This document shows positions 9,964 to 49,164 of a DNA stretch of 64,000 nucleotides, piece after piece. Position 1 is the stretch's first letter. Each line of letters starts with the position of its first letter. The translations under genes and the position numbers were made by a program. The stretch spans positions 248,001 to 312,000 of the IMG/VR virus record IMGVR_UViG_3300025121_000011. One strand, written 5' to 3'. A model generated the notes under the pieces. It saw only the letters and a program-made list of their open reading frames with translations. It made no database searches and was not told where the DNA came from.

Positions 9964-10170
9964 CTGCTTTGATGTTTTATGGCTGTAAGAGATATCTTTG
10001 ATGTTTTATAGCTACTCCATTGCTTTGATGTTTTCATTTTTATACTCCATTGCTTTGATGTTTTATAGCTACTCCATTGCTTTGATGTTTTCATTTTTAT
10101 ACTTTATGGCTGTAAGAGATATTTTCATTTTTATACTTTATGGCTGTAAGAGATATTTTCATTTTTTTTT
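9964..10170. repeat. mosaic tandem repeat tract
   Basis: Shuffled repeats of TGCTTTGATGTTTT, ATAGCTACTCCAT, CATTTTTATACT and TTATGGCTGTAAGAGATAT. Confidence 0.85.
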
Positions 10171-18477: not shown

Positions 18478-19350
18478 ATGGCAATGATTTCCAAAGATGA
18501 AATGCTTGCGCGAGTAGTTGACCCTATTCTTGAGGCAATGAAAGAGGGAAAGCTGCTATGGCTTCAAGGATGGAATGTGGGTGCGGGTGCGGGTCTCCCT
18601 TATAACCCGACCAAAGCATCTAATAAGCAAGCGTATCGAGGTGCGGTCAATAACATCTTGATGTGGTTTGCGTCCGCTGCTAATGGTTGGGGCGACCCTC
18701 GTTGGATGGGTTTTGCTCAAGCGAAAACAAAAGGATGGCGAGTTCGGAAGGGGGAGGAGTCGACCCAAATCTATGCTCCAATCATGGGTTCGTATCCGAT
18801 TGAAGAGAACGGCCAAAAGGTTTGGAGAAAATATGTCAAGGGCTTCAACCCTGTTCATGTTTTCAATGCCCAACAGGTGGATGGAATCCCCGCGATTGAA
18901 AAGGCTGGAACCTTGGATGTCTCCACCGGATATGCTGCCGCAGAGGACATGTATAAGGCTATGAACGTGCAAACGATTCATGGCGGTAATGTGGCTGCAT
19001 ATGCATATCAGGTTGACATCATTAGGATGCCGGAACCAGAAATGTTTGTGGGCGCAGATGAATACCACGCTACGCGCTTGCATGAAATGGGGCATGCGAC
19101 GGGGCACCCGTCTCGCATGGATAGAAGGATGTTCGGAACAGGGTTACAGGATTACGCTCAGGAAGAGCTTGTAGCGGAGTTGTTTGCTGCTTTCGCATGT
19201 GCAGACATTGGCGTATCCAAAGCTGAAATGACGCAGAATCATGCAGCATACCTCAAAAGCTGGCATGAGCGTCTAAGCAGGGAACCAAAAGCATTCATAG
19301 ATGCCGTATCGGCAGCATGGGAAGCTTTTGAGTTTGTTCGAAAACTGTGA
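18478..19350 (+). CDS. ardC: ArdC-family antirestriction/ssDNA-binding protein with zincin-like domain
   Basis: LPYNP..YRG..N..WMGFAQAK..GWRVRKGE; YHATRLHEMGHATGHPSRMDR; YAQEELVAE. Confidence 0.9.
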   Translation: MAMISKDEMLARVVDPILEAMKEGKLLWLQGWNVGAGAGLPYNPTKASNKQAYRGAVNNILMWFASAANGWGDPRWMGFAQAKTKGWRVRKGEESTQIYAPIMGSYPIEENGQKVWRKYVKGFNPVHVFNAQQVDGIPAIEKAGTLDVSTGYAAAEDMYKAMNVQTIHGGNVAAYAYQVDIIRMPEPEMFVGADEYHATRLHEMGHATGHPSRMDRRMFGTGLQDYAQEELVAELFAAFACADIGVSKAEMTQNHAAYLKSWHERLSREPKAFIDAVSAAWEAFEFVRKL

Positions 19351-27644: not shown

Positions 27645-28590
27645 GGGCTGTGAGAGGAGCTAACTTGAAGGGCTAAAGAGTTTGTGGTGATGATAGTGTT
27701 AGTTGAGTTAACTTCTTTCACAGGACCTGGAGACTTCTCGGAAATATTTAAGATGGTATCATAACCGACTGGCAGGGAGCCGCACGGCAACAAAGGGCGT
27801 TCACCTTAGGGTGGGGGTCTGCCAAAATGATCAAGCCAAGCCTTGCAGGTAGGAGTGACCGGCGAAACTCCCGTAACCTGAGTAGGAGAATGGCAAGACG
27901 TGAGGGACATGCAGTCGACCCTTAGGGATACGATAATCCCCATTTTTTAACATCGTTACAAATAAGTGTTTATTGAGTTTCACCAGTATCTCGGATAAAG
28001 GCGATGTTAAAGTTAAAACTGGTACTTGTTCTTAGCGGATCCCCGGCTCCGCGTTTGCCCAGAGGAAAGCCGAGAGACGTATAGTTTCTAACGGGTAGGC
28101 AGCATCGCAAGAGTGCCTGATAAAAAGAGGTTATCGGTGGTTGGCTTAGAGGCAGCCATCCTTAATGAGTGAGACGATTGCCCCAAGGCGCAAAATGTCG
28201 GTAAGTGGTAACAGCTATGCCGATGATGTACCGGGGATAAACAGGGAAAGTGAAAGGCACCCCGTAACTGGTAAGGCCAATCTTCTCTTCAGCGTAATAG
28301 CACGCCGATATAATCTCTTTTAGGTAGGTCCACATGGAATAGCCAAGCGCTATGGGATCGAATATTATCGCATTTGGGAATGGTACTCTCCCGCTGGTTG
28401 TACCACCTTCTTAAGCGTCAGACATTTACAATGCATAATGCCGGTTAATTTTGCCGGTTAAAGTTGTGAATGTAGAAAACACTTGTATATATAAGAACAC
28501 AAGCAGTGACGTAAGTCTGTGATGATTCTATGCAGACACTCTATCATAAATTATAAAAGATGCGCAGCTTTAAAGCTGCGCATCTTCATT
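27645..28590 (+). ncRNA. large structured ncRNA containing a 23S rRNA GTPase-associated-centre-like domain
   Basis: About 940-nt ORF-free unit between a header (27594) and a terminator (about 28556-28586). Contains GGTTGGCTTAGAGGCAGCCATC (H43-like) and AGCGTAATAGC (H44 loop-like), closed by stem 28132-28139/28303-28310. Confidence 0.65.
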
Positions 28591-30223: not shown

Positions 30224-30308
30224 GGGGGCGTGGCGGAAAGGCAGACGCGTCAGACTTAAAATCTGGTGAGCTTAGCTCGTGTGGGTTCAAGTCCCACCGC
30301 CCCTACCA
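30224..30308 (+). tRNA. trnL: tRNA-Leu(TAA)
   Basis: Full cloverleaf with variable arm, anticodon loop CT-TAA-AA, GGTTCAAGTCC T-arm and encoded CCA. Confidence 0.95.
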
Positions 30309-30577: not shown

Positions 30578-30836
30578 ATTTACTTCAAAGCCTTCTTTAT
30601 AAAGTCTTCTTTATATAGATAACCGCTTAAGCGGTTATCTATATTTGCGTTTACATACTAATCGCAAAGCCCGGCGGCAAAAGATTTGCAGCATCTCTAA
30701 AAAAATATCTTCTATAGTAATACAGAGGTGTAACCAAGTCGGAGAAGTCCTCCCAATTACATTAATATTACGGTTACGGGGTTTGGAGTTTTTCACCTCA
30801 CGAAAGACCAACATTTTTCAAAGGAGGAATCAAATC

Positions 30837-31184
30837 ATGGATTCGGAACAGTTTGTCAAGGCAGGTGGTCGTTTTCTTCATTACCGAAGTTCTGCTCAAC
30901 GTAGAATTACGGTGGCATATCGAGTGGAAAATGGGAATATTCTCTATGGGGCGGAGATTCATCAACCAGATGGTCCGGATGATTGCTGGATAAGGAAACA
31001 GGCAAATTATCGAGCTTTGTATCGGCTGATTAGCCAGCCGGTGACTATTCCTGATGGGAATATGACAAATACCGAGAGGCATAGTTATATCCGAAGTGCT
31101 CTTATCAAGTTTGGGTGTTGCCAAAGAGAAGTTCTTTCTGTCAATAAAAATATCGCCGGGAAGGACTTGAAGAGAAGGGTTTGA
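30837..31184 (+). CDS. hypothetical cassette protein running into a CRISPR fragment
   Basis: AGGAGG RBS before ATG 30837; the last codons derive from repeat/spacer sequence. Confidence 0.6.
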   Translation: MDSEQFVKAGGRFLHYRSSAQRRITVAYRVENGNILYGAEIHQPDGPDDCWIRKQANYRALYRLISQPVTIPDGNMTNTERHSYIRSALIKFGCCQREVLSVNKNIAGKDLKRRV

Positions 31185-31342
31185 GGGATTTGAGATCAAG
31201 AGCTTCAATGGAGGGCCAAGTCTGCGGGGCTGTTTATGCTGCTTATGATAATGCTGCTGTTTATGGTAGCAAGCCCCTCTCGAACGGGGCCAAGTCTGCT
31301 GGTTCCTCAGATGATCTGATTATGCTGTTGAAAAGTAGCAAA
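31153..31342 (-). CRISPR. mosaic cas-less mini-array (type I-G-like fragment plus type III-like repeat)
   Basis: TCGCCGGGAAGGAC, 35-nt spacer, hybrid repeat, 37-nt spacer, 37-nt repeat GTAGCAAGCCCCTCTCGAACGGGGCCAAGTCTGCTGG (31266-31302), 32-nt spacer, GTAGCAA. Confidence 0.7.
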
Positions 31343-32033
31343 AAGCCATCGGTAGCCATGGAGGAGTTTGTTGGGTCAACCAATAGATGTCGATTCCGAA
31401 TCTGATGCAAGGCTCGTGTCCCGGATTTGCTTGCGGGAAAAGAGGTGGTGAATTGACCGTCTATGCGTTATTACGTGTGGCCCGTCAAACATTGGACCTC
31501 ATAGTTTGAGTGACGAACCTATTCTCAAACACACTTTACACCAGAAGAGAGTCATGCCTGGACGCAGGAAGATATACAGAACATAAAAGAATGGGCGCAA
31601 TTCTCATCCTTCTGGTGTCTTTTATTTTATAATTTAGTCTTCACTTAAGAGTATCATGCTTTTGTCCTTCTTGTTGATGCGCTGATGCCTGTATTAACTC
31701 TGATACTAGACTAATCTGTAGTTACTTATATCAATGTTAAGGCGGCAAAACTTTTGCACATGCAGGCACGAAAGCTGCTATATGCAAGAATCATGCCAAG
31801 GGTTGAGAGTATTGACGCGACAAGAATTCCTGGCGGCAAAAGCTTTACAGCAACTTTAAAAAAATATCCCCCGTAGTAACTAAGAGGTGCAGGGGCAAGG
31901 TTCCAGACTCCAGCCCGGTAGCCCCTGCCGACCGGGCGGCCAAAACGGCCTTCTAACTCTAAAAAAATATTCTATAGAGTAATATAAGGCCAGCCGCCTG
32001 AGCGGCAAATAACAACAAACAGAGAGGTGTGAG

Positions 32034-32636
32034 ATGGGTAGTTTTAAGTTTAAGATTGGTGCCGCTGCTGCTGCTCCGACCGAGCGACATCCTGTGGAAG
32101 TCATGACGGACTCCGTAAATCTTGTGGATTTCGTTCGAAACGGTGAGCTGGTTCCGGCTTTCGCCTTTGCAACGGCCGATGGTCGTGGTACGTCTCCGGA
32201 AGTCGTTCCCCTTGATGAGATTGAAGAGTATGCGGCAGTTCTGCGAAAGGCCCTTGACGAGGGCATTCCGGAGCGAGCAGAAGATGATGAAGGTTATATT
32301 CCTTCTTATGTTGTTCTTGCAGCGGAACTTCATCAAGGCGAATACACGACGATTCGAAAGGATGCTTCTGGCGAACCCGTGAAGCTGAATGGTAAGGTGC
32401 AGCGCGATGATCATGGTGTGCGGTACTTCTTCCGGAGTAACACTGGACGGGGTGCGAAAACCCAGAAGATTCGGCCTGAGCATTTTGAAGATGTGGTTGG
32501 ATTCGTTGAGGCCCTGATTGACGAGGTTCCTGGCACCCTTGATATGTGGAATAGGGAGCTTCCAAACATTATGAAAGCTCGGGCTGAGGCTGAAGCCAAG
32601 GCTCAGACTGAGGCTGCCAAGGCTGCCAACGCCTGA
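32034..32636 (+). CDS. hypothetical cassette protein
   Basis: 200 aa; header and GAGG RBS. Confidence 0.7.
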   Translation: MGSFKFKIGAAAAAPTERHPVEVMTDSVNLVDFVRNGELVPAFAFATADGRGTSPEVVPLDEIEEYAAVLRKALDEGIPERAEDDEGYIPSYVVLAAELHQGEYTTIRKDASGEPVKLNGKVQRDDHGVRYFFRSNTGRGAKTQKIRPEHFEDVVGFVEALIDEVPGTLDMWNRELPNIMKARAEAEAKAQTEAAKAANA

Positions 32637-32689
32637 TCGATACGGATGTGATTGTGTGTGATTGGGAATTGAAAATGATTTAAGATTCA

Positions 32690-32782
32690 GTCTTTCCCGG
32701 CGATAAAAACCGGGAAAGACATCTCTGCTTCCTCAGATGATCGATTAAACTGCTTTCGGGACAAGCTTTCGGGTTTGTCCCG
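32690..32782 (-). CRISPR. solitary repeat-spacer unit (crRNA-like)
   Basis: Hairpin GTCTTTCCCGG-N9-CCGGGAAAGAC resembling the I-G-like repeat, followed by 27 nt identical to 47951-47977. Confidence 0.55.
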
Positions 32783-32898
32783 TTCCTGCGTTTACGATGT
32801 CAAATTTTTGCCGCCCACGCATATGTGCAACTCTAAAAAAATATTCCACATAGTAATATAGGGCTGTAAGCAAACACCATTTCAAAGGAGATTATCCA

Positions 32899-33141
32899 AT
32901 GCGATTCCTGACCAGGCTTTTTTCCGCGATCTCTATTATCCTTGCCGCTCTGACTTCGGCCGTGTTTACAGCTATTATCACCGGATTTGTTCTGATGCTT
33001 CTGTGGAACTGGTTGCTTGTTGGAGCTACCTCTGTGATCGGAGTGGGGCTTCCTGCAATCACTTGGCTTCAGGGTTGGGGGCTTTGTTTCCTTTGTACTA
33101 TGCTTTTCAATAGTCGTTCAAAGATCGGGGCTTCTACCTGA
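32899..33141 (+). CDS. small membrane protein
   Basis: Two hydrophobic helices; AGGAG RBS. Confidence 0.65.
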   Translation: MRFLTRLFSAISIILAALTSAVFTAIITGFVLMLLWNWLLVGATSVIGVGLPAITWLQGWGLCFLCTMLFNSRSKIGAST

Positions 33142-33157
33142 CATCTGCCTGAATAAA

Positions 33158-33233
33158 GGGACGTTAACTCAATTGGTAGAGTAGCGGACTTTTAATCCGT
33201 TTGTTTGGGGTTCGAGTCCCCAACGTCCCACCA
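33158..33233 (+). tRNA. trnK: tRNA-Lys(TTT)
   Basis: 76-nt cloverleaf, anticodon loop CT-TTT-AA, encoded CCA. Confidence 0.95.
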
Positions 33234-33342
33234 TTTAATAACGAGCGGTTCCGGAAAAAGCTATCCGGATAGTGAGAGTGGCGAAGGTCTCACGAACAAG
33301 TGGAGTAGCTTCCATACGATCCTGATCCCCATAAGTTACAAT

Positions 33343-33413
33343 CCGGTGGTAGCTCAGCAAGGTTAGAGCGCTCAGACAACTGAGAAAACGCGGGTTCAAT
33401 TCCCGCCCCCGTA
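33343..33413 (+). ncRNA. tRNA-like element or pseudo-tRNA
   Basis: Canonical D-arm and T-arm, but the anticodon arm has a 4-nt loop, the acceptor stem is imperfect and there is no CCA. Confidence 0.5.
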
Positions 33414-33574
33414 TTACTACGAAAGCGGTGATGGTGAGCAGCCCGAGATCTACAGTAATAGACGTATGAGTGGATGCGTTAGAGACACCTGCGGAGTCCT
33501 TGAGATGTTGATGTAAGGGTCTCACCACTATTTAACTTTTCTAACATTTAACCCTTTTAACAAAGGAGCTTCCG

Positions 33575-33973
33575 ATGCCTCTTGAAGATAATGAAAACCT
33601 TGCCATGGAATTGGTTCGGGTTGCTGATGTGATCCAAATTTCTATTTCCTACTTGACCAGGCTTGTTGAATCCTTGGTAGCTCAAAACCCCTCTGATCGT
33701 TCAAGGAATGAAGGTGATGCCATCCTTAAGATGATTAATGAAAACAAAGATGCTCTGGCTGAGGGAGTTGCCGCTATCTATAGCAAGTATTGGTCTCCAG
33801 AGGTAATGCAAGCAGCTATTGATTGGAATAATAGTGCTTCATGCATGGAGATGAAGGCGAAAACAGCAGTTGTCTCTGCGGAAGTAGAACAACTCTCGGG
33901 TGTGTGGATGCAACAGATTGTTGCTTCTGTTCTCGGTTCTGATGGTAATCAAACACTCGATACCCTCAATTAA
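33575..33973 (+). CDS. DUF2059-like protein
   Basis: VAAIYSKYWSPEVMQAAIDWNNS resembles the family motif. Confidence 0.5.
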   Translation: MPLEDNENLAMELVRVADVIQISISYLTRLVESLVAQNPSDRSRNEGDAILKMINENKDALAEGVAAIYSKYWSPEVMQAAIDWNNSASCMEMKAKTAVVSAEVEQLSGVWMQQIVASVLGSDGNQTLDTLN

Positions 33974-34003
33974 GATTAATTCTTATACTTAAGAGGTGTA
34001 GTA

Positions 34004-34519
34004 ATGACTTGTGTAACTATGTATTTGATTGGTGGCCTTCAGTTTCTTGGGATTATAGTTGGAGTGATGTTAGTAACCGTACTCATTTTTGCCGGACCTG
34101 CTCTATTTTGGAGATGGGCTGTAGGCTTTAGGATGGTTGATTTTATCTGGAATGATCAGGACAAGGTATATAAACACGTCTGGATTCGGAAGAATCCGGG
34201 ATGGCTTATCAGGTTTCTTGATCGTTTGACGCCAGGTTGGATTAAAAAGATTTCATCTTTTCTCTATACTTGGTTTGAACGAACCATGCCAAAGTTGTTC
34301 ATCATTCTGATGGGTTTACTTGTAGTCTCTATTTTGGGATTTGGTTCATACGGATACTCTCAGCAACAAGTCTTAATTTCATTCTCAGAAGAGTGTGAAT
34401 ACACTTGTCGAGAGGATGAAACCTCTCGACTCTGGGAAGAAGATGGAGATATCAAGTGTGCTTGCACTCCAGTTGGTGCAGAGGAAGTCTTTATCCTCGG
34501 ACATATTCCTTGCGGATGA
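34004..34519 (+). CDS. membrane protein
   Basis: Two hydrophobic segments and a Cys-rich tail. Confidence 0.65.
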   Translation: MTCVTMYLIGGLQFLGIIVGVMLVTVLIFAGPALFWRWAVGFRMVDFIWNDQDKVYKHVWIRKNPGWLIRFLDRLTPGWIKKISSFLYTWFERTMPKLFIILMGLLVVSILGFGSYGYSQQQVLISFSEECEYTCREDETSRLWEEDGDIKCACTPVGAEEVFILGHIPCG

Positions 34520-34661
34520 AATGAAAACCAAGGAAGAGTTTCTCAACTCTTCCGCGGCGGCAAAAACTTAACTGCATCTCTAAAAAAATATCCTCCGTAG
34601 TAACTAAGGGGTGTAAATCCAATAGGAATCGGAGATGACAGTGTTCCGAGCGTAAGAATGT

Positions 34662-34970
34662 TTGACTCTCCGATTTCTTTTTGGAAAAACCTTTACTACT
34701 CAGGAGTATCTAATGTCTTGTACGTGTCGCGATAACACTGGATGTTCAGTTTGTGATCCTTCTTGGGAGTCTGATTTGGAATCGTTTTTCGATTTCTCGT
34801 GTGAAGAGTGGCCGGATTTGTCCAACCTTCTCGATAGGGAGCCTTGGCTTCAAGATGTGATTGCATCGGCATATCTCAACGGCGCCATGCAAAAAGATGA
34901 TGATGAAAATGAAGCGGCTTTTGATCAGTATCTGGCGATAGAAGATTACAACATCGATGACTCCGATTGA
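34662..34970 (+). CDS. acidic Cys-motif small protein (likely start at ATG about 34712)
   Basis: MSCTCRDNTGCSVC followed by a D/E-rich body. Confidence 0.55.
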   Translation: MTLRFLFGKTFTTQEYLMSCTCRDNTGCSVCDPSWESDLESFFDFSCEEWPDLSNLLDREPWLQDVIASAYLNGAMQKDDDENEAAFDQYLAIEDYNIDDSD

Positions 34971-35036
34971 AATATTCTTTCTGTATTTCCTAAAGACTGT
35001 TGGCAAATAGGGCTTATTTTATAAGGAGAATTACTC

Positions 35037-35327
35037 ATGGCTATTTATGTATCAAATGCTGATAGTGTTCCAAAGTGTCAGCATTGGGCTATTCTCAAGT
35101 TTCAAACAATCCATATTCCCGGTGATGAAAGAAGTCGAACAAATCCCGGGCACGGATATGGTCCTTCTACAGAAACCACTTGTTCATATGTTGCATATAT
35201 GAACGAACAGGAGTGGGTGGTAGAAGTTCAAAAACTTGCGTCCCGAGCATTTCCTTCGGATGACTTTATTGCAATCAAGGTAATTCCCGCCACAATTACT
35301 ACAAAGGTAAGCGTTAGCGTATCTTGA
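35037..35327 (+). CDS. hypothetical protein
   Basis: AGGAG RBS. Confidence 0.65.
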   Translation: MAIYVSNADSVPKCQHWAILKFQTIHIPGDERSRTNPGHGYGPSTETTCSYVAYMNEQEWVVEVQKLASRAFPSDDFIAIKVIPATITTKVSVSVS

Positions 35328-35602
35328 TGGAACTCAAGATCTTTTCAGAAAAGAATATTTGATATGCAAAGATTTAGAATATGGATTCATTTCTTTGCAT
35401 AAGTCTTTTTCTCTTGTCTTTACTTTCTCAGCTGCATCTTCTGAAAGCATTTGCATATATGTGTTTTTGTTGTTTTTTCGTCGATTCGCATGTCAAATAA
35501 TACATATCATACAAGTGCTTTCAGAAGATGCAGAGAGATACCTATATCTCCGTTCTCTATAATTGTAGATGAGATGTCTCGCATATAAACATCCAAAAGT
35601 AT

Positions 35603-35947
35603 ATGAGGAGGGTTGATATGTATTATATCATCTTCGAACGAGGACCAGATGCAACAAAGAAGCTTGTTGTTGGACCATTTTATACGGTTCTAATCACACT
35701 CGATTTGTTGCGAGTAGATGATTGCAAAACCTTGGCATCATTTAGTGGATACACGCTCAATAGTGATGTTCAACCTTATTGGTGGATTGAATATATTTTT
35801 CCGCCAGGGATTGAAGATCATTTTCAAGATATAACTATTTCAATCACTTCTCCCACAAACTCTCCAGACGGATTCATCGAACTGGATGATAGTGGAGACA
35901 ATCCTTTGAGGGCAAACTATTGGACGAACCCTACGTATTCAACCTGA
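35603..35947 (+). CDS. hypothetical protein
   Basis: 114-aa ORF. Confidence 0.55.
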   Translation: MRRVDMYYIIFERGPDATKKLVVGPFYTVLITLDLLRVDDCKTLASFSGYTLNSDVQPYWWIEYIFPPGIEDHFQDITISITSPTNSPDGFIELDDSGDNPLRANYWTNPTYST

Positions 35948-36210
35948 CAAATTGCAACGCTGATGTGTGCGAGCTATTTCCAGCAGACTTGATTAAGGCA
36001 CAACGCATCGGATTTGCCGATCTCCAGGTTGGAGATTTGATCTTATCCTTTACTGATGATTATAAGCCAGCGTGGAATGAGGTTACGTTTGTTTCTCGCA
36101 AATACGAATTAATGCGCGTGTATTGGAGCGTAGACAACGGTGAGCGATATATGTGTTGGGGTGATACTCCAATATACATCAAAAAGAAACTAAAACAGGA
36201 GGTTGCATGA
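35920..36210 (+). CDS. hypothetical protein (paralog of 36535-36834)
   Basis: FN..ADVCE..RIxFAxLxxGDLILSxxDDxxPA shared between the two. Confidence 0.65.
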   Translation: MDEPYVFNLTNCNADVCELFPADLIKAQRIGFADLQVGDLILSFTDDYKPAWNEVTFVSRKYELMRVYWSVDNGERYMCWGDTPIYIKKKLKQEVA

Positions 36211-36226
36211 GTCATTATATGAGTTA

Positions 36227-36512
36227 GTATTAATGGGGCCCGGCTTCTGTCGCCGGGAAGGACGAAGTATCCGAAGGATTTACGACCGAGAAAAGCTGTT
36301 GCTTCAATGGGGCCCGGCTTCTGTCGCCGGGAAGGACTTGAAGAGAAGGGTCCGAAGGATTTGAGACCAGGAGCTTCAATAGAGGGCCTAAGTCTGCAAG
36401 GAACACATCTTTAATCTTATTATATCTCTGCTTCCATAGGTTAGCGAGTCCCTTCCGATAAGGAAGGGACTCTGTCTATCTTCAACAGGGGACTTCTGCT
36501 GCCGGGAAGAAA
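36227..36512 (-). CRISPR. cas-less CRISPR mini-array, type I-G(I-U)-like repeats plus a type III-like unit
   Basis: 37-nt repeats at 36227-36263 and 36301-36337 (minus strand GTCCTTCCCGGCGACAGAAGCCGGGCCCCATTGAAGC). Spacers of 37, 35 and 39 nt, a hybrid repeat at 36373-36400, a hairpin repeat at 36440-36476 and a degenerate repeat at about 36479-36512. Confidence 0.85.
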
Positions 36513-36534
36513 TAAGAATAGGAGGTTGTAAGTT

Positions 36535-36834
36535 ATGAGTCACTATTGGAGGTTTAACTCTCAGGATTCTCATGCAGATGTGTGTGAAGATTATGGAGTA
36601 GAACAACTTGGAGTAACACGCATTCGATTTGCCTATCTTAAATTTGGAGATCTAATTCTGTCTATTGATGACGATAATAGACCTGCTTATAACTTAGTGG
36701 TTTATGTTTTACTAAAGGAAGACAAGGTAATTTGGGAAGTAGAAGGTGTTCGATATATATCTTCAAAAGAAAGCGCGGTGTATGTAGACAGCGCAGTGCA
36801 TGTTAAAAATCGAGAAGCAGAAACAAACGGCTGA
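36535..36834 (+). CDS. hypothetical protein (paralog of 35920-36210)
   Basis: GGAGG RBS; shared motifs. Confidence 0.7.
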   Translation: MSHYWRFNSQDSHADVCEDYGVEQLGVTRIRFAYLKFGDLILSIDDDNRPAYNLVVYVLLKEDKVIWEVEGVRYISSKESAVYVDSAVHVKNREAETNG

Positions 36835-47242: not shown

Positions 47243-47540
47243 GTTTTACCTATTCCAACTGAATTGCGAGAGCGAAAAAGAGTGGATTGATTTTTATTAT
47301 GGTTTATCAGTCCTCCTTCATATTTAGTTATATAATTGCTTATACGGTTGTTTTAGATGTTTTGTCTATATTTAAATAGCAATATACAAAAGATATACGT
47401 CTAAGAAAAGTTTGAATTAAGTAAAAATATTTAGATAGCGATAAAATTCAGTATCTGTTGAGTTTGTTAGAGAAATTTATACACAAATTGATGAAGTTAA
47501 TATCATTGGGTATTATTCTTCTTATGATGTTATTCATGTT

Positions 47541-47607
47541 GATGTTAACCGATGAACAGAAGAAATCGGTGATATATAATATGGATGCAATTGGAGGTTG
47601 GAAATGA
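47541..47607 (+). pseudogene. 3' remnant of a fourth copy of the Imm5-like tandem gene
   Basis: GATGTTAACCGATGAACAGAAGAAA...ATGGATG..ATTGG..TTGGAAATGA matches the 3' ends of copies 1 and 2. Confidence 0.7.
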
Positions 47608-48104
47608 TCTCATCAAGAGATTTGATTCTTTTTATTAATCCTCCAAAATATTTATCCGTATTGATTGCTTATACAGTTGCCGCAGATGTTCTGCCTATAT
47701 TTGAAAAGCATTTTCCGAAGGATTTGAGACCGAGAAAAGCTGTTGAAGCGTCTAAGATGTATTTGGATGGATATGCGGTTGATGCTGCTGCTTATGTTGA
47801 TGCTCCTTCTGCTCATTATGCTCCTTCTGCTCATTATGCTGCTGTTGCTGTTAATGCTGCTGATGCTTATGCTGCTGCTAATGCTGCTGCTAATGCTGTT
47901 TATTTTACGGCCAAAGATTCTTCCGAAGAACACATCTTTAACCTAATTTTATCTCTGCTTCCTCAGATGATCGATTATGCTGTTGAAAATCAAGTTAAGT
48001 TATTCACCGGGTCTGGAGACTTCTCAGAAATATTTGAGATGTTAACCGATGAACAGAAGAAGCTGGTGATATACAATATGGATGTAATTGGGAATTGGAA
48101 ATGA
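47604..48104 (+). CDS. Imm5-like Ala/Tyr-rich protein, copy 1
   Basis: AADVLPIFEKHFPKDLRPRKAVEASKMYL plus Ala-rich variable core; ATGA-coupled tandem. Confidence 0.7.
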   Translation: MISSRDLILFINPPKYLSVLIAYTVAADVLPIFEKHFPKDLRPRKAVEASKMYLDGYAVDAAAYVDAPSAHYAPSAHYAAVAVNAADAYAAANAAANAVYFTAKDSSEEHIFNLILSLLPQMIDYAVENQVKLFTGSGDFSEIFEMLTDEQKKLVIYNMDVIGNWK

Positions 48105-48658
48105 TTTCATCAAAAGATTTGGTTTTATTCATTAATCCTCCTAAATATTTATCCGTATTGATTGCTTATACAGTTGCCGCAGATGTTCTGCCTATATTTG
48201 AAAAGCATTTTCCGAAGGATTTGAGACCGAGAAAAGCTGTTGAAGCGTCTAAGATGTATTTGGATGGATATGCGGTTGATTCTGCTACCGCTGTTAATGC
48301 TGCTAATGCTGCTGCTAATGCTGCTTATGCTGCTGTTAATACTGCTGCTAATGCTGCTGCTAATGCTGCTGCTTATGCTGCTGCTTATGCTGCTGCTTAT
48401 GCTGTTTATTATGTTGATGCTACTGATGTTGCTGCTAATGCTGCTTATGCTGCTTGTTATGCAGCCAAAGCCTCTTCCGAAGAACACATCTTTAATCTTA
48501 TTCTATCTCTGCTTCCTCAGATGATCAATTATGCTGTTGAAAATCAAATCAAGTTGTTCACCGGACCTGGAGATTTCTCAGAGATATTTGAGATGTTAAC
48601 CGATGAACAGAAGAAGCTGGTGATATACAATATGGATGTAATTGGGAATTGGAAATGA
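48101..48658 (+). CDS. Imm5-like Ala/Tyr-rich protein, copy 2
   Basis: Near-identical flanks to copy 1, longer variable core. Confidence 0.7.
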   Translation: MISSKDLVLFINPPKYLSVLIAYTVAADVLPIFEKHFPKDLRPRKAVEASKMYLDGYAVDSATAVNAANAAANAAYAAVNTAANAAANAAAYAAAYAAAYAVYYVDATDVAANAAYAACYAAKASSEEHIFNLILSLLPQMINYAVENQIKLFTGPGDFSEIFEMLTDEQKKLVIYNMDVIGNWK

Positions 48659-49164
48659 TTTCATCAAAAGATTTGGTTTTATTCATTAATCCTCCTAAAT
48701 ATTTATCTGTATTGATTGCTTATACAGTTGCCGCAGATGTTCTGCCTATATTTGAAGAGAAGTATCCGAAGGATTTAAGACCGAGAAAAGCTGTTGAAGT
48801 TGCTAAGATGTATTTGGAAGGATATGCTGCTGATGCTTATGATGCTGCTATTTATTATGTTACTGATGCTGCTTATGCTATTGATGCCACTGTTTATGCT
48901 GCTAATGCTGCTTATTATGCTGCTTATGCTGCTTATGCTGTTACTTATAATTCTGATGCTGCCTATGCCGCTTATTATGCAGCTAAAGCTTCTTCCGAAG
49001 AACACATCTTCAACCTGATTTTATCTCTGCTTCCTCAGATGATCAATTATGCTGTTGAAAATCAAATTAAGTTATTCACAGGACCCGGAGATTTCTCAGG
49101 AATATTTGAGATGTTAACCGATGAACAGAAGAAGCTGGTGATATTCAATATGGATGTAATTTAA
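48655..49164 (+). CDS. Imm5-like Ala/Tyr-rich protein, copy 3
   Basis: Near-identical flanks, distinct variable core. Confidence 0.7.
   Translation: MISSKDLVLFINPPKYLSVLIAYTVAADVLPIFEEKYPKDLRPRKAVEVAKMYLEGYAADAYDAAIYYVTDAAYAIDATVYAANAAYYAAYAAYAVTYNSDAAYAAYYAAKASSEEHIFNLILSLLPQMINYAVENQIKLFTGPGDFSGIFEMLTDEQKKLVIFNMDVI

What the first reader, a model, noticed from the sequence alone, without database searches (positions are those of the whole stretch)
32690..32782. Solitary repeat-spacer unit embedded in a terminator region
Seen: a perfect 11-bp hairpin GTCTTTCCCGG-CGATAAAAA-CCGGGAAAGAC whose arms resemble the end of the I-G-like repeat (10/11). It is immediately followed by 27 nt identical to 47951-47977 (Imm5-like copy 1) and then a second hairpin. 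Inference: a minimal crRNA-like or anti-crRNA unit stabilised by flanking stems, and a third independent instance aimed at the same gene family.
Basis: partly seen in the sequence, partly recalled or inferred. Interest (0 to 1): 0.7.

Follow-up and report, generated by a model that had tools for sequence, protein, structure and literature searches.

The report
Decayed CRISPR repeat in phage terminator
A 335-kb groundwater phage carries, in the tail of one early gene, a single worn-down copy of a bacterial type I-G CRISPR repeat flanked by two snippets of the phage's own multi-copy gene; it is real and belongs to a set of similar units nearby, but it is incomplete, absent from relatives and probably not a working guide RNA.

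Summary
An 11-bp perfect hairpin (32690-32720) abuts 27 nt identical to an Imm5-like paralogue, and a second hairpin follows (32758-32781).

- **Repeat origin:** The hairpin derives from a type I-G CRISPR repeat. It resembles the 37-nt repeat of a nearby mini-array. That repeat class forms long arrays beside I-G cas genes in bacteria. No random island-like sequence gave a comparable match.
- **Second fragment:** The unit is therefore spacer-repeat-spacer around one degenerate repeat.
- **Second hairpin:** It is not part of the unit. It is the ancestral terminator of the upstream gene, conserved by position and compensatory change in two relatives that lack the insert.
- **Not a complete crRNA:** Only one repeat, a degraded handle, short fragments (27 and 21 nt against the usual 34-38), non-TTN PAMs, and no promoter on the repeat's canonical minus strand. 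All 30 island promoters point the other way.

Most likely it is a decayed relic of a phage-borne I-G mini-array, carried passively in a 3' UTR as an extra stem-loop. A decoy or anti-crRNA role remains possible. The wider context is the more interesting result: three orphan I-G loci in an anti-defence island, all matching the phage's own 12-copy gene family.

The parts
32034..32636 (+). Gene A (200 aa, no family hit). The unit lies in its 3' untranslated tail.
   Evidence: ORF. Seven homologues at 48-54% identity. No Pfam, NCBIfam or PHROG hit. Island-type promoters lie upstream at 31850 and 31953.
32661..32683 (+). Fragment U2: 21 nt, 20/21 identical to the stop/start junctions between tandem Imm5-like paralogues. 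It abuts the repeat-like element.
   Evidence: matches at 48087, 48641 and genome 19934. The fragment has 3 mismatches in 23 nt to the L136 and L137 paralogue junctions.
32684..32720 (-). R*: a degenerate solitary type I-G repeat of 37 nt. Its core is the perfect 11-bp hairpin at 32690-32720. On the minus strand it fits the I-G signature with 3 substitutions in 22 specified positions. On the plus strand it is 21/25 identical to repeat positions 1-25.
   Evidence: (I3, I4, I11). It is 16/17 identical to the degenerate terminal repeat of mini-array 2 (31151-31167).
32721..32747 (+). Fragment U: a 27-mer identical to codons SLLPQMIDY of the Imm5-like paralogues, sense on the plus strand. Read to 32751 it is 29/31.
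32758..32781 (+). Hairpin 2: the ancestral terminator-type stem-loop of gene A. It is not part of the CRISPR-like insert.
   Evidence: Positional orthologue with compensatory stem changes in L145 and L147, followed by a conserved box. Energy -17.1 kcal/mol. It has no U-run, so the terminator scan did not call it.
32797..32815 (+). Conserved inverted box (ATGTCAAATTTTTGCCGCC) between the terminator and the next promoter.
   Evidence: Conserved in the window, L145 and L147. It is inverted relative to the GGCGGCAAAA boxes of the promoters (I8, I14, I16).
32827..32866 (+). Island-type promoter of the next gene (32899-33141, a small membrane protein).
   Evidence: Weight-matrix hit above 15 bits. 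The motif is listed. The downstream gene is conserved in L145.
36232..36472 (-). Context: mini-array 1. Two perfect I-G repeats, a degenerate one and a palindromised hairpin variant, with spacers C, B and A all matching the Imm5-like family.
   Evidence: Weak Rfam CRISPR-DR16 hit on the minus strand.
31151..31340 (-). Context: mini-array 2. Degenerate repeats with three 35-36-nt blocks matching the Imm5-like family. Its terminal repeat is the closest relative of R*.
47598..49164 (+). Context: three tandem Imm5-like paralogues, the in-window copies of the roughly 12-copy family matched by every island fragment.
   Evidence: (PF21805, weak).

Best explanation
The element is a roughly 91-nt insert (32661-32751) in the 3' untranslated tail of gene A, just upstream of that gene's ancestral terminator hairpin. 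It consists of one degenerate type I-G CRISPR repeat flanked on both sides by short fragments of the phage's own Imm5-like genes.

It is the decayed end of a phage-borne I-G mini-array, closest to the degenerate terminal repeat of mini-array 2 at 31151. The repeat's short native stem has been turned into a perfect 11-bp palindrome.

**How it works today (inferred).** It is transcribed passively on the plus strand from gene A's promoter. There it adds a second stable stem-loop in front of the terminator, acting as a 3'-end stabiliser or termination aid. It does not yield a functional guide RNA.

**Shown:**
- the I-G origin of the hairpin;
- the spacer-repeat-spacer anatomy;
- the ancestral nature of hairpin 2;
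- the absence of the insert in relatives;
- the absence of any island-type minus-strand promoter.

**Inferred:** that the unit is a relic, and that its only present role is structural.
For: - **Repeat class typed as I-G.** The pattern hits many multi-copy arrays. Arrays of the ..CATTGAAGC class lie next to Csx17, Csb1, Csb2, Cas4g-Cas1g and Cas3g. L157 is a cas1-cas2-leader-array locus.
- **Hairpin similarity to the repeat is not chance**. It is 16/17 identical to the terminal repeat of array 2.
- **Incompleteness.** There is one repeat only, 22/37 identical to the canonical repeat, and 6/8 matches in the 3' handle on the minus strand. The fragments are 27 and 21 nt, against 34-38 nt in host arrays. 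The PAM position reads AAC rather than TTN.
- **Hairpin 2 is ancestral.** It aligns with the terminator hairpins of L145 and L147 with compensatory changes, and those relatives have no 27-mer and no I-G hairpin at this site.
- **Transcription is plus-strand.** All 30 island promoters are on the plus strand and none on the minus strand. The promoter scan found no minus-strand site upstream of the unit.
- **A second palindromised repeat variant** (36446-36472) sits at a terminator position on the plus strand and is called terminator-like.
- **The phage has no I-G cas genes**.
Against: - The 27-mer is still 100% identical to five paralogues and ends abruptly at the repeat boundary, exactly as a spacer does. 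That points to recent origin or maintenance rather than long decay.
- Turning CCCCAT into AAAGAC to perfect the palindrome needs five substitutions. That suggests either selection for something or a copying event.
- The unit lies in an anti-defence-type island (ArdC-like gene), where RNA anti-CRISPRs are typically found.
- Neither hairpin is followed by a U-run, so a classical intrinsic-terminator role is unproven.
- No expression data exist.
- All available assemblies of this phage are identical, so selection cannot be read from variation.
Confidence: 0.45

Rival explanations
1. RNA anti-CRISPR decoy (Racr-like). The repeat-derived hairpin, expressed from an early anti-defence island, binds the host's type I-G repeat-binding protein (Csb2, the Cas5-Cas6 fusion) and/or Cas7g. 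This titrates them away from host crRNAs. The flanking gene fragments would be incidental.
For: - It is a solitary repeat-like element with no cas genes in the genome.
- The hairpin keeps the inner CCCGG/CCGGG stem. On the plus strand the loop differs from the repeat's only by transitions.
- The island encodes an ArdC-like anti-restriction protein, and relatives carry RadC.
- Island relatives carry exact copies of a real host I-G repeat, in one case as a single repeat (L148).
- Racrs are an established class (PMC10651486).
Against: - Similarity to the repeat is well below what defines solitary repeat units (22/37 overall; the 3' handle is degraded).
- There is no promoter immediately upstream on either strand. 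The canonical strand has none at all.
- The intact repeats of mini-array 1, 3.5 kb away, would be far better decoys.
- The unit is not conserved in relatives.
Confidence: 0.22
2. Functional crRNA-like guide read from the minus strand. The degenerate repeat supplies a hairpin for fragment U or a handle for fragment U2. Host I-G Cascade would then be directed to Imm5-like genes, either to exclude related co-infecting phages or to regulate the phage's own copies.
For: - On the minus strand the order is spacer, then repeat, then spacer, with the boundaries exactly at the 37-nt repeat limits.
- The orientation matches both mini-arrays.
- Virus-borne mini-arrays that target relatives, while the carrier's own sites hold mismatches, are known (PMC6858448, PMC11656645).
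- Own copies do carry two mismatches at the PAM-proximal end and a non-TTN PAM.
Against: - No minus-strand promoter.
- U has no upstream repeat or handle, because hairpin 2 is an ancestral terminator. U2 has no downstream repeat.
- The fragments are too short.
- The related phage fragments L136 and L137 carry the same boundary mismatches, so no better-matching competitor allele exists in the data.
Confidence: 0.1
3. Anti-crRNA sponge read from the plus strand. The gene-A transcript tail carries the reverse complement of the repeat next to sense copies of conserved Imm5-like sites. It could therefore pair with host I-G pre-crRNAs or crRNAs, especially those acquired against this 12-copy family, and block or destroy them.
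For: - The plus strand is the one certainly transcribed: 30 of 30 promoters and all genes are on it.
- All four repeat loci of the island family lie antisense to their neighbours, between a stop codon and a terminator. The 13 solitary repeats in other viral contigs show no such uniform antisense placement relative to their neighbours.
- Sites C, B and F have TTC or TTT PAMs, so hosts would plausibly acquire spacers there.
Against: - There is no precedent.
- For this particular unit the complementarity to a real repeat is only 22/37.
- None of about 115 host-array spacers recovered matches the phage.
- The orientation argument rests on four loci, three of them in one genome.
Confidence: 0.1
4. 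No CRISPR relation. The region is debris of a decayed tandem Imm5-like paralogue (junction, then site 2 of the next copy, which is collinear on the plus strand), interrupted by an ordinary terminator hairpin.
For: - The two fragments are collinear with tandem paralogues (junction at 48087, site 2 at 48505).
- A clear in-frame gene fragment without repeats exists elsewhere in the island (27717-27755).
Against: - The hairpin's match to the I-G repeat is highly non-random.
- Its boundary with the 27-mer is the same as the repeat-spacer boundaries of both mini-arrays.
- Identity drops from 27/27 to nothing at the edges instead of decaying gradually.
Confidence: 0.05

Closest known systems
Solitary repeat units / RNA anti-CRISPRs (Racr; Camara-Wilpert et al. 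2023, PMC10651486)
   Same: A single CRISPR-repeat-like element in a phage genome without cas genes, in a neighbourhood with anti-defence genes. The hairpin is retained.
   Different: It is much more diverged from any real repeat (22/37). It has a degraded handle and a palindromised stem. It is not directly behind a promoter, and it lies antisense to all local transcription. It is flanked by fragments of the phage's own genes. Type I-G is not mentioned in that paper's main text.
Virus-borne mini-CRISPR arrays for inter-virus conflict (Medvedeva et al. 2019, PMC6858448; review PMC11656645)
   Same: Orphan arrays of one to three spacers with host-type repeats. The spacers match genes of the virus lineage, and the carrier's own copies hold mismatches near the critical end. 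This fits the neighbouring arrays at 36.2 and 31.2 kb.
   Different: The unit studied has one repeat and truncated spacers. No leader or promoter was found. The targets are a roughly 12-copy family in the same genome, and one neighbouring spacer (C) is 36/37 identical with a TTC PAM, which looks like true self-targeting. No better-matching competitor allele was found.
Viral crRNA-like regulatory RNAs (Cracr; bioRxiv 10.1101/2024.10.29.618823) and host CreA/CreR
   Same: Degenerate repeat-like units with shortened or partial spacers, sometimes stacked into arrays, encoded by phages next to anti-defence genes.
   Different: Cracr spacers match host cas or toxin promoters, whereas here they match the phage's own coding sequences. 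Cracrs are described for V-A, I-F, I-E, I-C and I-B, not I-G. The host and its cas promoter are unknown, so that kind of targeting cannot be checked.
Hairpin transcription terminators / 3' stabilising stem-loops
   Same: Two stable GC-rich stem-loops between a stop codon and the next promoter. Hairpin 2 is conserved by position with compensatory changes in relatives.
   Different: No U-run follows either stem. Hairpin 1 has a demonstrable CRISPR-repeat ancestry.

Membership tests
Type I-G CRISPR repeat | 36-37-nt repeat with a CCCGGC/GCCGGG stem, ending in ATTGAAGC, of the class found beside I-G cas genes | tested here: inconclusive
   The neighbouring array repeat meets it fully. The studied hairpin keeps the 5' 11 nt (10/11) and the inner stem. 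On the minus strand it fits the signature with 3 of 22 substitutions. It is only 22/37 identical overall, with a 6/8 handle.
CRISPR (mini-)array | At least two direct repeats separated by a spacer of normal length (34-38 nt for this class) | tested here: not met
   There is only one repeat-like element. The 'second stem' is the ancestral terminator. The fragments are 27 and 21 nt, against 34-38 nt in L151.
CRISPR (mini-)array | Leader or promoter driving transcription in the repeat's canonical orientation | tested here: not met
   No island-type promoter on the minus strand anywhere in the genome. No sigma-70-like site upstream of the unit on the minus strand. There is no RNA data.
Functional type I-G protospacer match | TTN-type PAM and an intact PAM-proximal seed at the target. 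TTC and TTT are seen for neighbouring spacers C, B and F. That I-G uses TTN is from my own knowledge, not tested here. | tested here: not met
   For U, the PAM position reads AAC at 11 of 11 paralogues, with two mismatches at positions 3-4 when U is read as a 31-nt spacer.
Solitary repeat unit / Racr | Solitary, not associated with cas genes | tested here: met
   No Csb1 or Csb2 HMM hit, and no tblastn hit with I-G Cas proteins, in the 335-kb genome.
Solitary repeat unit / Racr | Near-full-length similarity to a host repeat (a full match in SRUFinder is above 90% coverage) | tested here: not met
   22/37 to the phage's own array repeat. No host array with a closer repeat was found in the genome, viral or metagenome scans.
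Solitary repeat unit / Racr | Immediately downstream of a promoter | tested here: not met
   The nearest plus-strand promoters (31850, 31953) drive gene A, about 740-840 nt upstream. There are none on the minus strand.
Solitary repeat unit / Racr | Binds Cas6-type and Cas7 proteins and inhibits interference | not testable with these tools
   This needs biochemistry, and the host is unknown.
Cracr / crRNA-like regulatory RNA | [quoted passage not shown] | not testable with these tools
   The host and its I-G locus were not identified. The fragments match the phage's own coding sequence instead.
Intrinsic terminator | GC-rich stem-loop followed by a U-run | tested here: not met
   The stems are strong, but neither was called by the terminator scan because there is no U-run. 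The orthologous hairpins in relatives also lack one.
Intrinsic terminator | Conserved position and structure at the gene end in relatives | tested here: met
   This holds for hairpin 2 only. It aligns with the hairpins of L145 and L147 with compensatory changes, and the conserved box follows 12-14 nt later.

The most novel reading that the evidence does not exclude
The unit is one of four loci in this island family that place type I-G repeats antisense inside early, anti-defence transcripts. The RNAs made would then be 'anti-crRNAs': the reverse complement of the host repeat joined to sense copies of the phage's most exposed (12-copy, TTC/TTT-flanked) target sites. They would pair with host pre-crRNAs or crRNAs and neutralise them. 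That would be an antisense-RNA class of anti-CRISPR distinct from Racr decoys and Cracr regulators.
Probability: 0.1. Interest if true: 0.85.

Novelty: new variant of a known kind. Interest (0 to 1): 0.45.

Why it matters
On its own the unit is a minor relic. It matters as a marker of a larger, unusual arrangement. A complete 335-kb phage has a distinct early, anti-defence island: about 27 kb, its own 30 promoters, higher GC, and an ArdC-like gene. That island holds three orphan type I-G repeat loci, and every spacer in them matches the phage's own roughly 12-copy Imm5-like gene family. All of them sit antisense to local transcription.

Relatives of the island carry exact copies of a real host I-G repeat. 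No I-G solitary repeat or crRNA-like RNA from a phage appeared in the papers I read.

If the loci are active, they would show one of three things: self-directed use of host Cascade by a phage, a conflict between phages fought over a multi-copy gene, or an antisense route to disabling crRNAs. If they are inactive, they record how phage-borne arrays decay into terminator-like hairpins. That bears on how repeat-like hairpins in phage genomes should be annotated.

Tried and rejected
- **Phage collection:** a megablast of 31-35 kb against INPHARED phages gave no match.
- **IMG/VR relatives of gene A:** none confirmed. The 22-mer of the Imm5-like site found only two short fragments of a related phage.
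- **Rfam:** only a weak sub-threshold CRISPR-DR16 hit on the array repeat and nothing on the unit.
- **Own cas genes:** none found by HMM or tblastn. The large ORFs at 1.8-8 kb are not cas genes.
- **Host link by spacers:** about 115 spacers from metagenomic arrays with the closest repeats gave no credible hit to the phage. No array with the phage's exact loop variant was found outside the phage itself.
- **RNA evidence:** no RNA run was listed as holding the stretch.
- **Runs X12 and X13:** these low-share runs turned out to hold the same phage at low depth, not a diverged relative.
- **Independent assemblies:** they are identical over the unit, so they carry no information about selection.
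- **'Competitor allele' test:** the paralogues of the related phage (L136, L137) have the same boundary mismatches.
- **Island mobility:** no att-like direct repeats at the island edges.
- **Candidate repeat fragment at about 13512:** only a partial match inside an ORF, taken as chance.
- **Spacer of the relatives' array (L147):** no target in any held sequence.

Full report
**1. The observation**

- Positions 32690-32720 form a perfect 11-bp hairpin with a 9-nt loop.
- The next 27 nt (32721-32747) are identical to 47951-47977 and 26/27 to 48505 and 49023.
- A second hairpin lies at 32758-32781.
- The 116-nt stretch folds much better than shuffled controls on both strands, with z = -5.9 on plus and -4.0 on minus.
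- The hairpin arm is 10/11 identical to GTCCTTCCCGG, which occurs in a repeat at 36.2-36.3 kb and at 31156.

**2. The setting**

*The genome.* The window is 248001-312000 of a 335,169-bp IMG/VR virus record with direct terminal repeats, rated complete. It comes from groundwater metagenomes. Genome GC is about 0.33, but window 10-37 kb is an island of GC 0.44-0.47.

*The island.* It carries 30 copies of a promoter-like motif, all on the plus strand. The motif occurs nowhere else in the genome. The island encodes many small genes, two or three tRNAs and an ArdC-like anti-restriction protein. This is the profile of an early, anti-defence module. Several assemblies join the island to low-GC flanks, so it is physically part of the phage.

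*The 27-mer's source.* It comes from a family of weakly Imm5-like genes (PF21805). The family has at least 11 full copies in three tandem clusters. The copies have conserved ends and a hypervariable Ala/Tyr/Asn middle.

**3. The repeat is genuine type I-G**

Region 36232-36440 holds two perfect copies of a repeat that, read on the minus strand, is a 37-mer ending in ATTGAAGC.
- A pattern built from its stem and end hits many long arrays in bacterial genomes.
- The sub-class ending in CATTGAAGC lies next to Csx17, Csb1, Csb2, Cas4g-Cas1g and Cas3g.
- A metagenome contig (L157) shows the end of cas1, cas2, a leader and an array. Its repeat differs from the phage's only in the loop.

The phage itself has no I-G cas genes.

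**4. Three loci aimed at one family**

- **Mini-array 1 (36472-36232, minus strand)** has spacers A, B and C.
- **Mini-array 2 (31340-31151, minus strand)** has degenerate repeats and three 35-36-nt blocks.
- All six blocks match the Imm5-like genes, at three sites and in the variable middle. They read as sense on the plus strand.
- **PAMs and matches.** Spacer C is 36/37 identical to two own copies, with TTC at the PAM position in all 11 copies. Spacers B and F have TTT. Spacer A has CAT.

The studied unit is the third locus.

**5. Anatomy of the unit**

The hairpin is not a chance look-alike. Only the array repeats and this hairpin match repeat positions 1-25 within 6 mismatches in 335 kb. 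None of 200 random island-like sequences gave a hit.
- **Minus strand:** the 37 nt at 32720-32684 fit the I-G signature with 3 substitutions in 22 specified positions.
- **Plus strand:** the first 25 nt are 21/25 identical to the repeat, and all loop differences are transitions.
- **Closest relative:** the degenerate terminal repeat of array 2, at 16/17.
- **The stem:** the native 6-bp stem has become an 11-12-bp perfect palindrome, and the ATTGAAGC handle is reduced to 6/8.
- **The second fragment:** on the far side of this repeat lies a second paralogue fragment, 32661-32681, 20/21 identical to the gene junctions.

The unit is therefore spacer-repeat-spacer around a single repeat.

**6. Hairpin 2 is not part of it**

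Homologues of gene A (48-54% identity) were recovered with their flanks.
- In L145/146 and in L147-149 the order is conserved: gene A, a hairpin, 12-14 nt, a conserved box, a promoter, then the small membrane-protein gene.
- The hairpins align with hairpin 2 and differ by compensatory changes.
- Those relatives have no 27-mer and no I-G hairpin at this site.

Hairpin 2 is therefore the ancestral terminator-type stem-loop. About 91 nt (32661-32751) is a lineage-specific insert.

L147 and L155 carry their own I-G mini-array of two repeats in another gene-end gap, again antisense to the genes. L148 has a single repeat there. Orphan I-G repeats are thus a trait of the island family, but this particular unit is not.

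**7. Can it work as a guide?**

No complete crRNA can be derived from it.
- Fragment U has a repeat downstream but no repeat or handle upstream.
- Fragment U2 has a degraded handle upstream but no repeat downstream.
- Both fragments are shorter than the 34-38 nt spacers of host arrays.
- The PAM position for U reads AAC, and the two bases nearest the boundary mismatch all paralogues.
- A related phage's paralogues (L136, L137) show the same mismatches, so no better competitor target is known.
- No promoter of the island type, and no sigma-70-like site, faces the unit on the minus strand.
- No RNA run was listed as holding the stretch.

**8. Interpretation**

The best-supported reading is a decayed end of a phage-borne I-G mini-array. 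It is now carried in gene A's 3' tail, where its palindromised repeat adds a stem-loop ahead of the ancestral terminator. A second palindromised variant (36446-36472) occupies an equivalent, terminator-like position after mini-array 1. I put this at about 0.45.

Three rivals remain open:
- **A Racr-like decoy.** The location in an anti-defence island favours it. The poor repeat similarity and the lack of a nearby promoter count against it.
- **A minus-strand guide.** The geometry fits. Expression and completeness do not.
- **A plus-strand anti-crRNA.** The strand surely transcribed carries the reverse complement of the repeat. All four loci of the family are antisense to their neighbours, whereas the 13 solitary repeats found in other viral contigs show no such uniform antisense placement. 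There is no precedent for this.

Pure gene debris is disfavoured.

**9. Relation to known systems**

Virus-borne mini-arrays and solitary repeat units are established (PMC6858448, PMC10651486, PMC11656645). Phage crRNA-like regulators have recently been described for V-A, I-F, I-E, I-C and I-B (10.1101/2024.10.29.618823). This case differs in four ways:
- it is type I-G;
- it matches the carrier's own multi-copy genes;
- it lies antisense inside transcription units;
- for this unit, it is strongly degenerate.

I file it as a new variant of a known kind, with moderate interest. The surrounding system deserves more interest than the unit.

**10. Unexplained**

- Spacer C appears to be self-targeting.
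- The fragments are collinear with gene order in all three loci.
- Island contigs have about 1.6 times the k-mer depth of the neighbouring phage contig in two runs.

Noticed in passing
window 36232-36472: Orphan type I-G mini-array on the minus strand: two perfect 37-nt repeats, one degenerate repeat and a palindromised hairpin variant. Its three spacers all match the phage's own Imm5-like genes. Spacer C (36264-36300) is 36/37 identical to two copies, with a TTC PAM at all 11 copies, so it looks self-targeting.
   Followed up: yes
window 31151-31340: A second, more degenerate mini-array. Three 35-36-nt blocks match the Imm5-like family, in gene order, separated by 31-34-nt repeat-like blocks. 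It ends in a truncated repeat that is the closest relative of the studied hairpin.
   Followed up: partly
window 10379-34613: Thirty copies of a promoter-like motif (GGCGGCAAAA, 12 nt, CTCTAAAAAnATAT, 6 nt, AGTAA), all on the plus strand and confined to a GC-rich island (0.44-0.47 against 0.33). The motif occurs nowhere else in the 335-kb genome.
   Followed up: yes
window 18478-19350: ArdC-like anti-restriction protein (ArdC N-terminal domain plus zincin metallopeptidase; PHROG 'anti-restriction protein'). Island relatives carry RadC. This suggests an early anti-defence module.
   Followed up: partly
window 47598-49164, and genome 25-2837 and 18741-20511: A roughly 12-copy tandem family of weakly Imm5-like proteins. 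The N- and C-terminal parts are nearly identical at the DNA level. The Ala/Tyr/Asn/Asp middle is hypervariable in sequence and length and is built from 9-12-nt tandem units.
   Followed up: partly
window 27680-27761: A 26-codon micro-ORF directly behind an island promoter keeps the Imm5-like FTGPGDFSEIF block in frame (87-93% DNA identity). It has no repeats around it, so it is a gene fragment rather than a spacer.
   Followed up: partly
L147 2179-2330, L155 1569-1714, L148 2679-2760: Island relatives (GC 0.48-0.50) carry I-G repeats 100% identical to a real host array (L157: cas1-cas2-leader-array, GC 0.68). L147 and L155 have two repeats and L148 has one. All are antisense to the neighbouring genes. 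The spacer has no target in held data.
   Followed up: partly
window 32797-32815; L145 and L147 equivalents: A conserved inverted copy of the promoter-associated GGCGGCAAAA box (GATGTCAAAwTTTTrCCGCC) sits 12-14 nt after gene A's terminator hairpin in all three lineages. Its function is unknown.
   Followed up: no
window 30800-36700 (runs X1, X7): Island contigs have about 1.6 times the k-mer depth of the adjacent low-GC phage contig in two runs (29.6-31.7 against 18.8, and 64-72 against 40). The cause could be GC bias or extra copies of the island.
   Followed up: no
window 33343-33413: A third tRNA-like sequence is called by Rfam (36 bits) but not by ARAGORN. It lies next to tRNA-Lys(TTT) at 33158-33233. 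tRNA-Leu(TAA) is at 30224-30308.
   Followed up: no
window 47323-47409 and 47548-47604: Pseudogene-like pieces of the Imm5-like family lie upstream of the first intact copy. One has an in-frame stop.
   Followed up: no
window 9996-10166: Tandem repeats of 27-57 nt lie right at the island's sharp left GC boundary.
   Followed up: no
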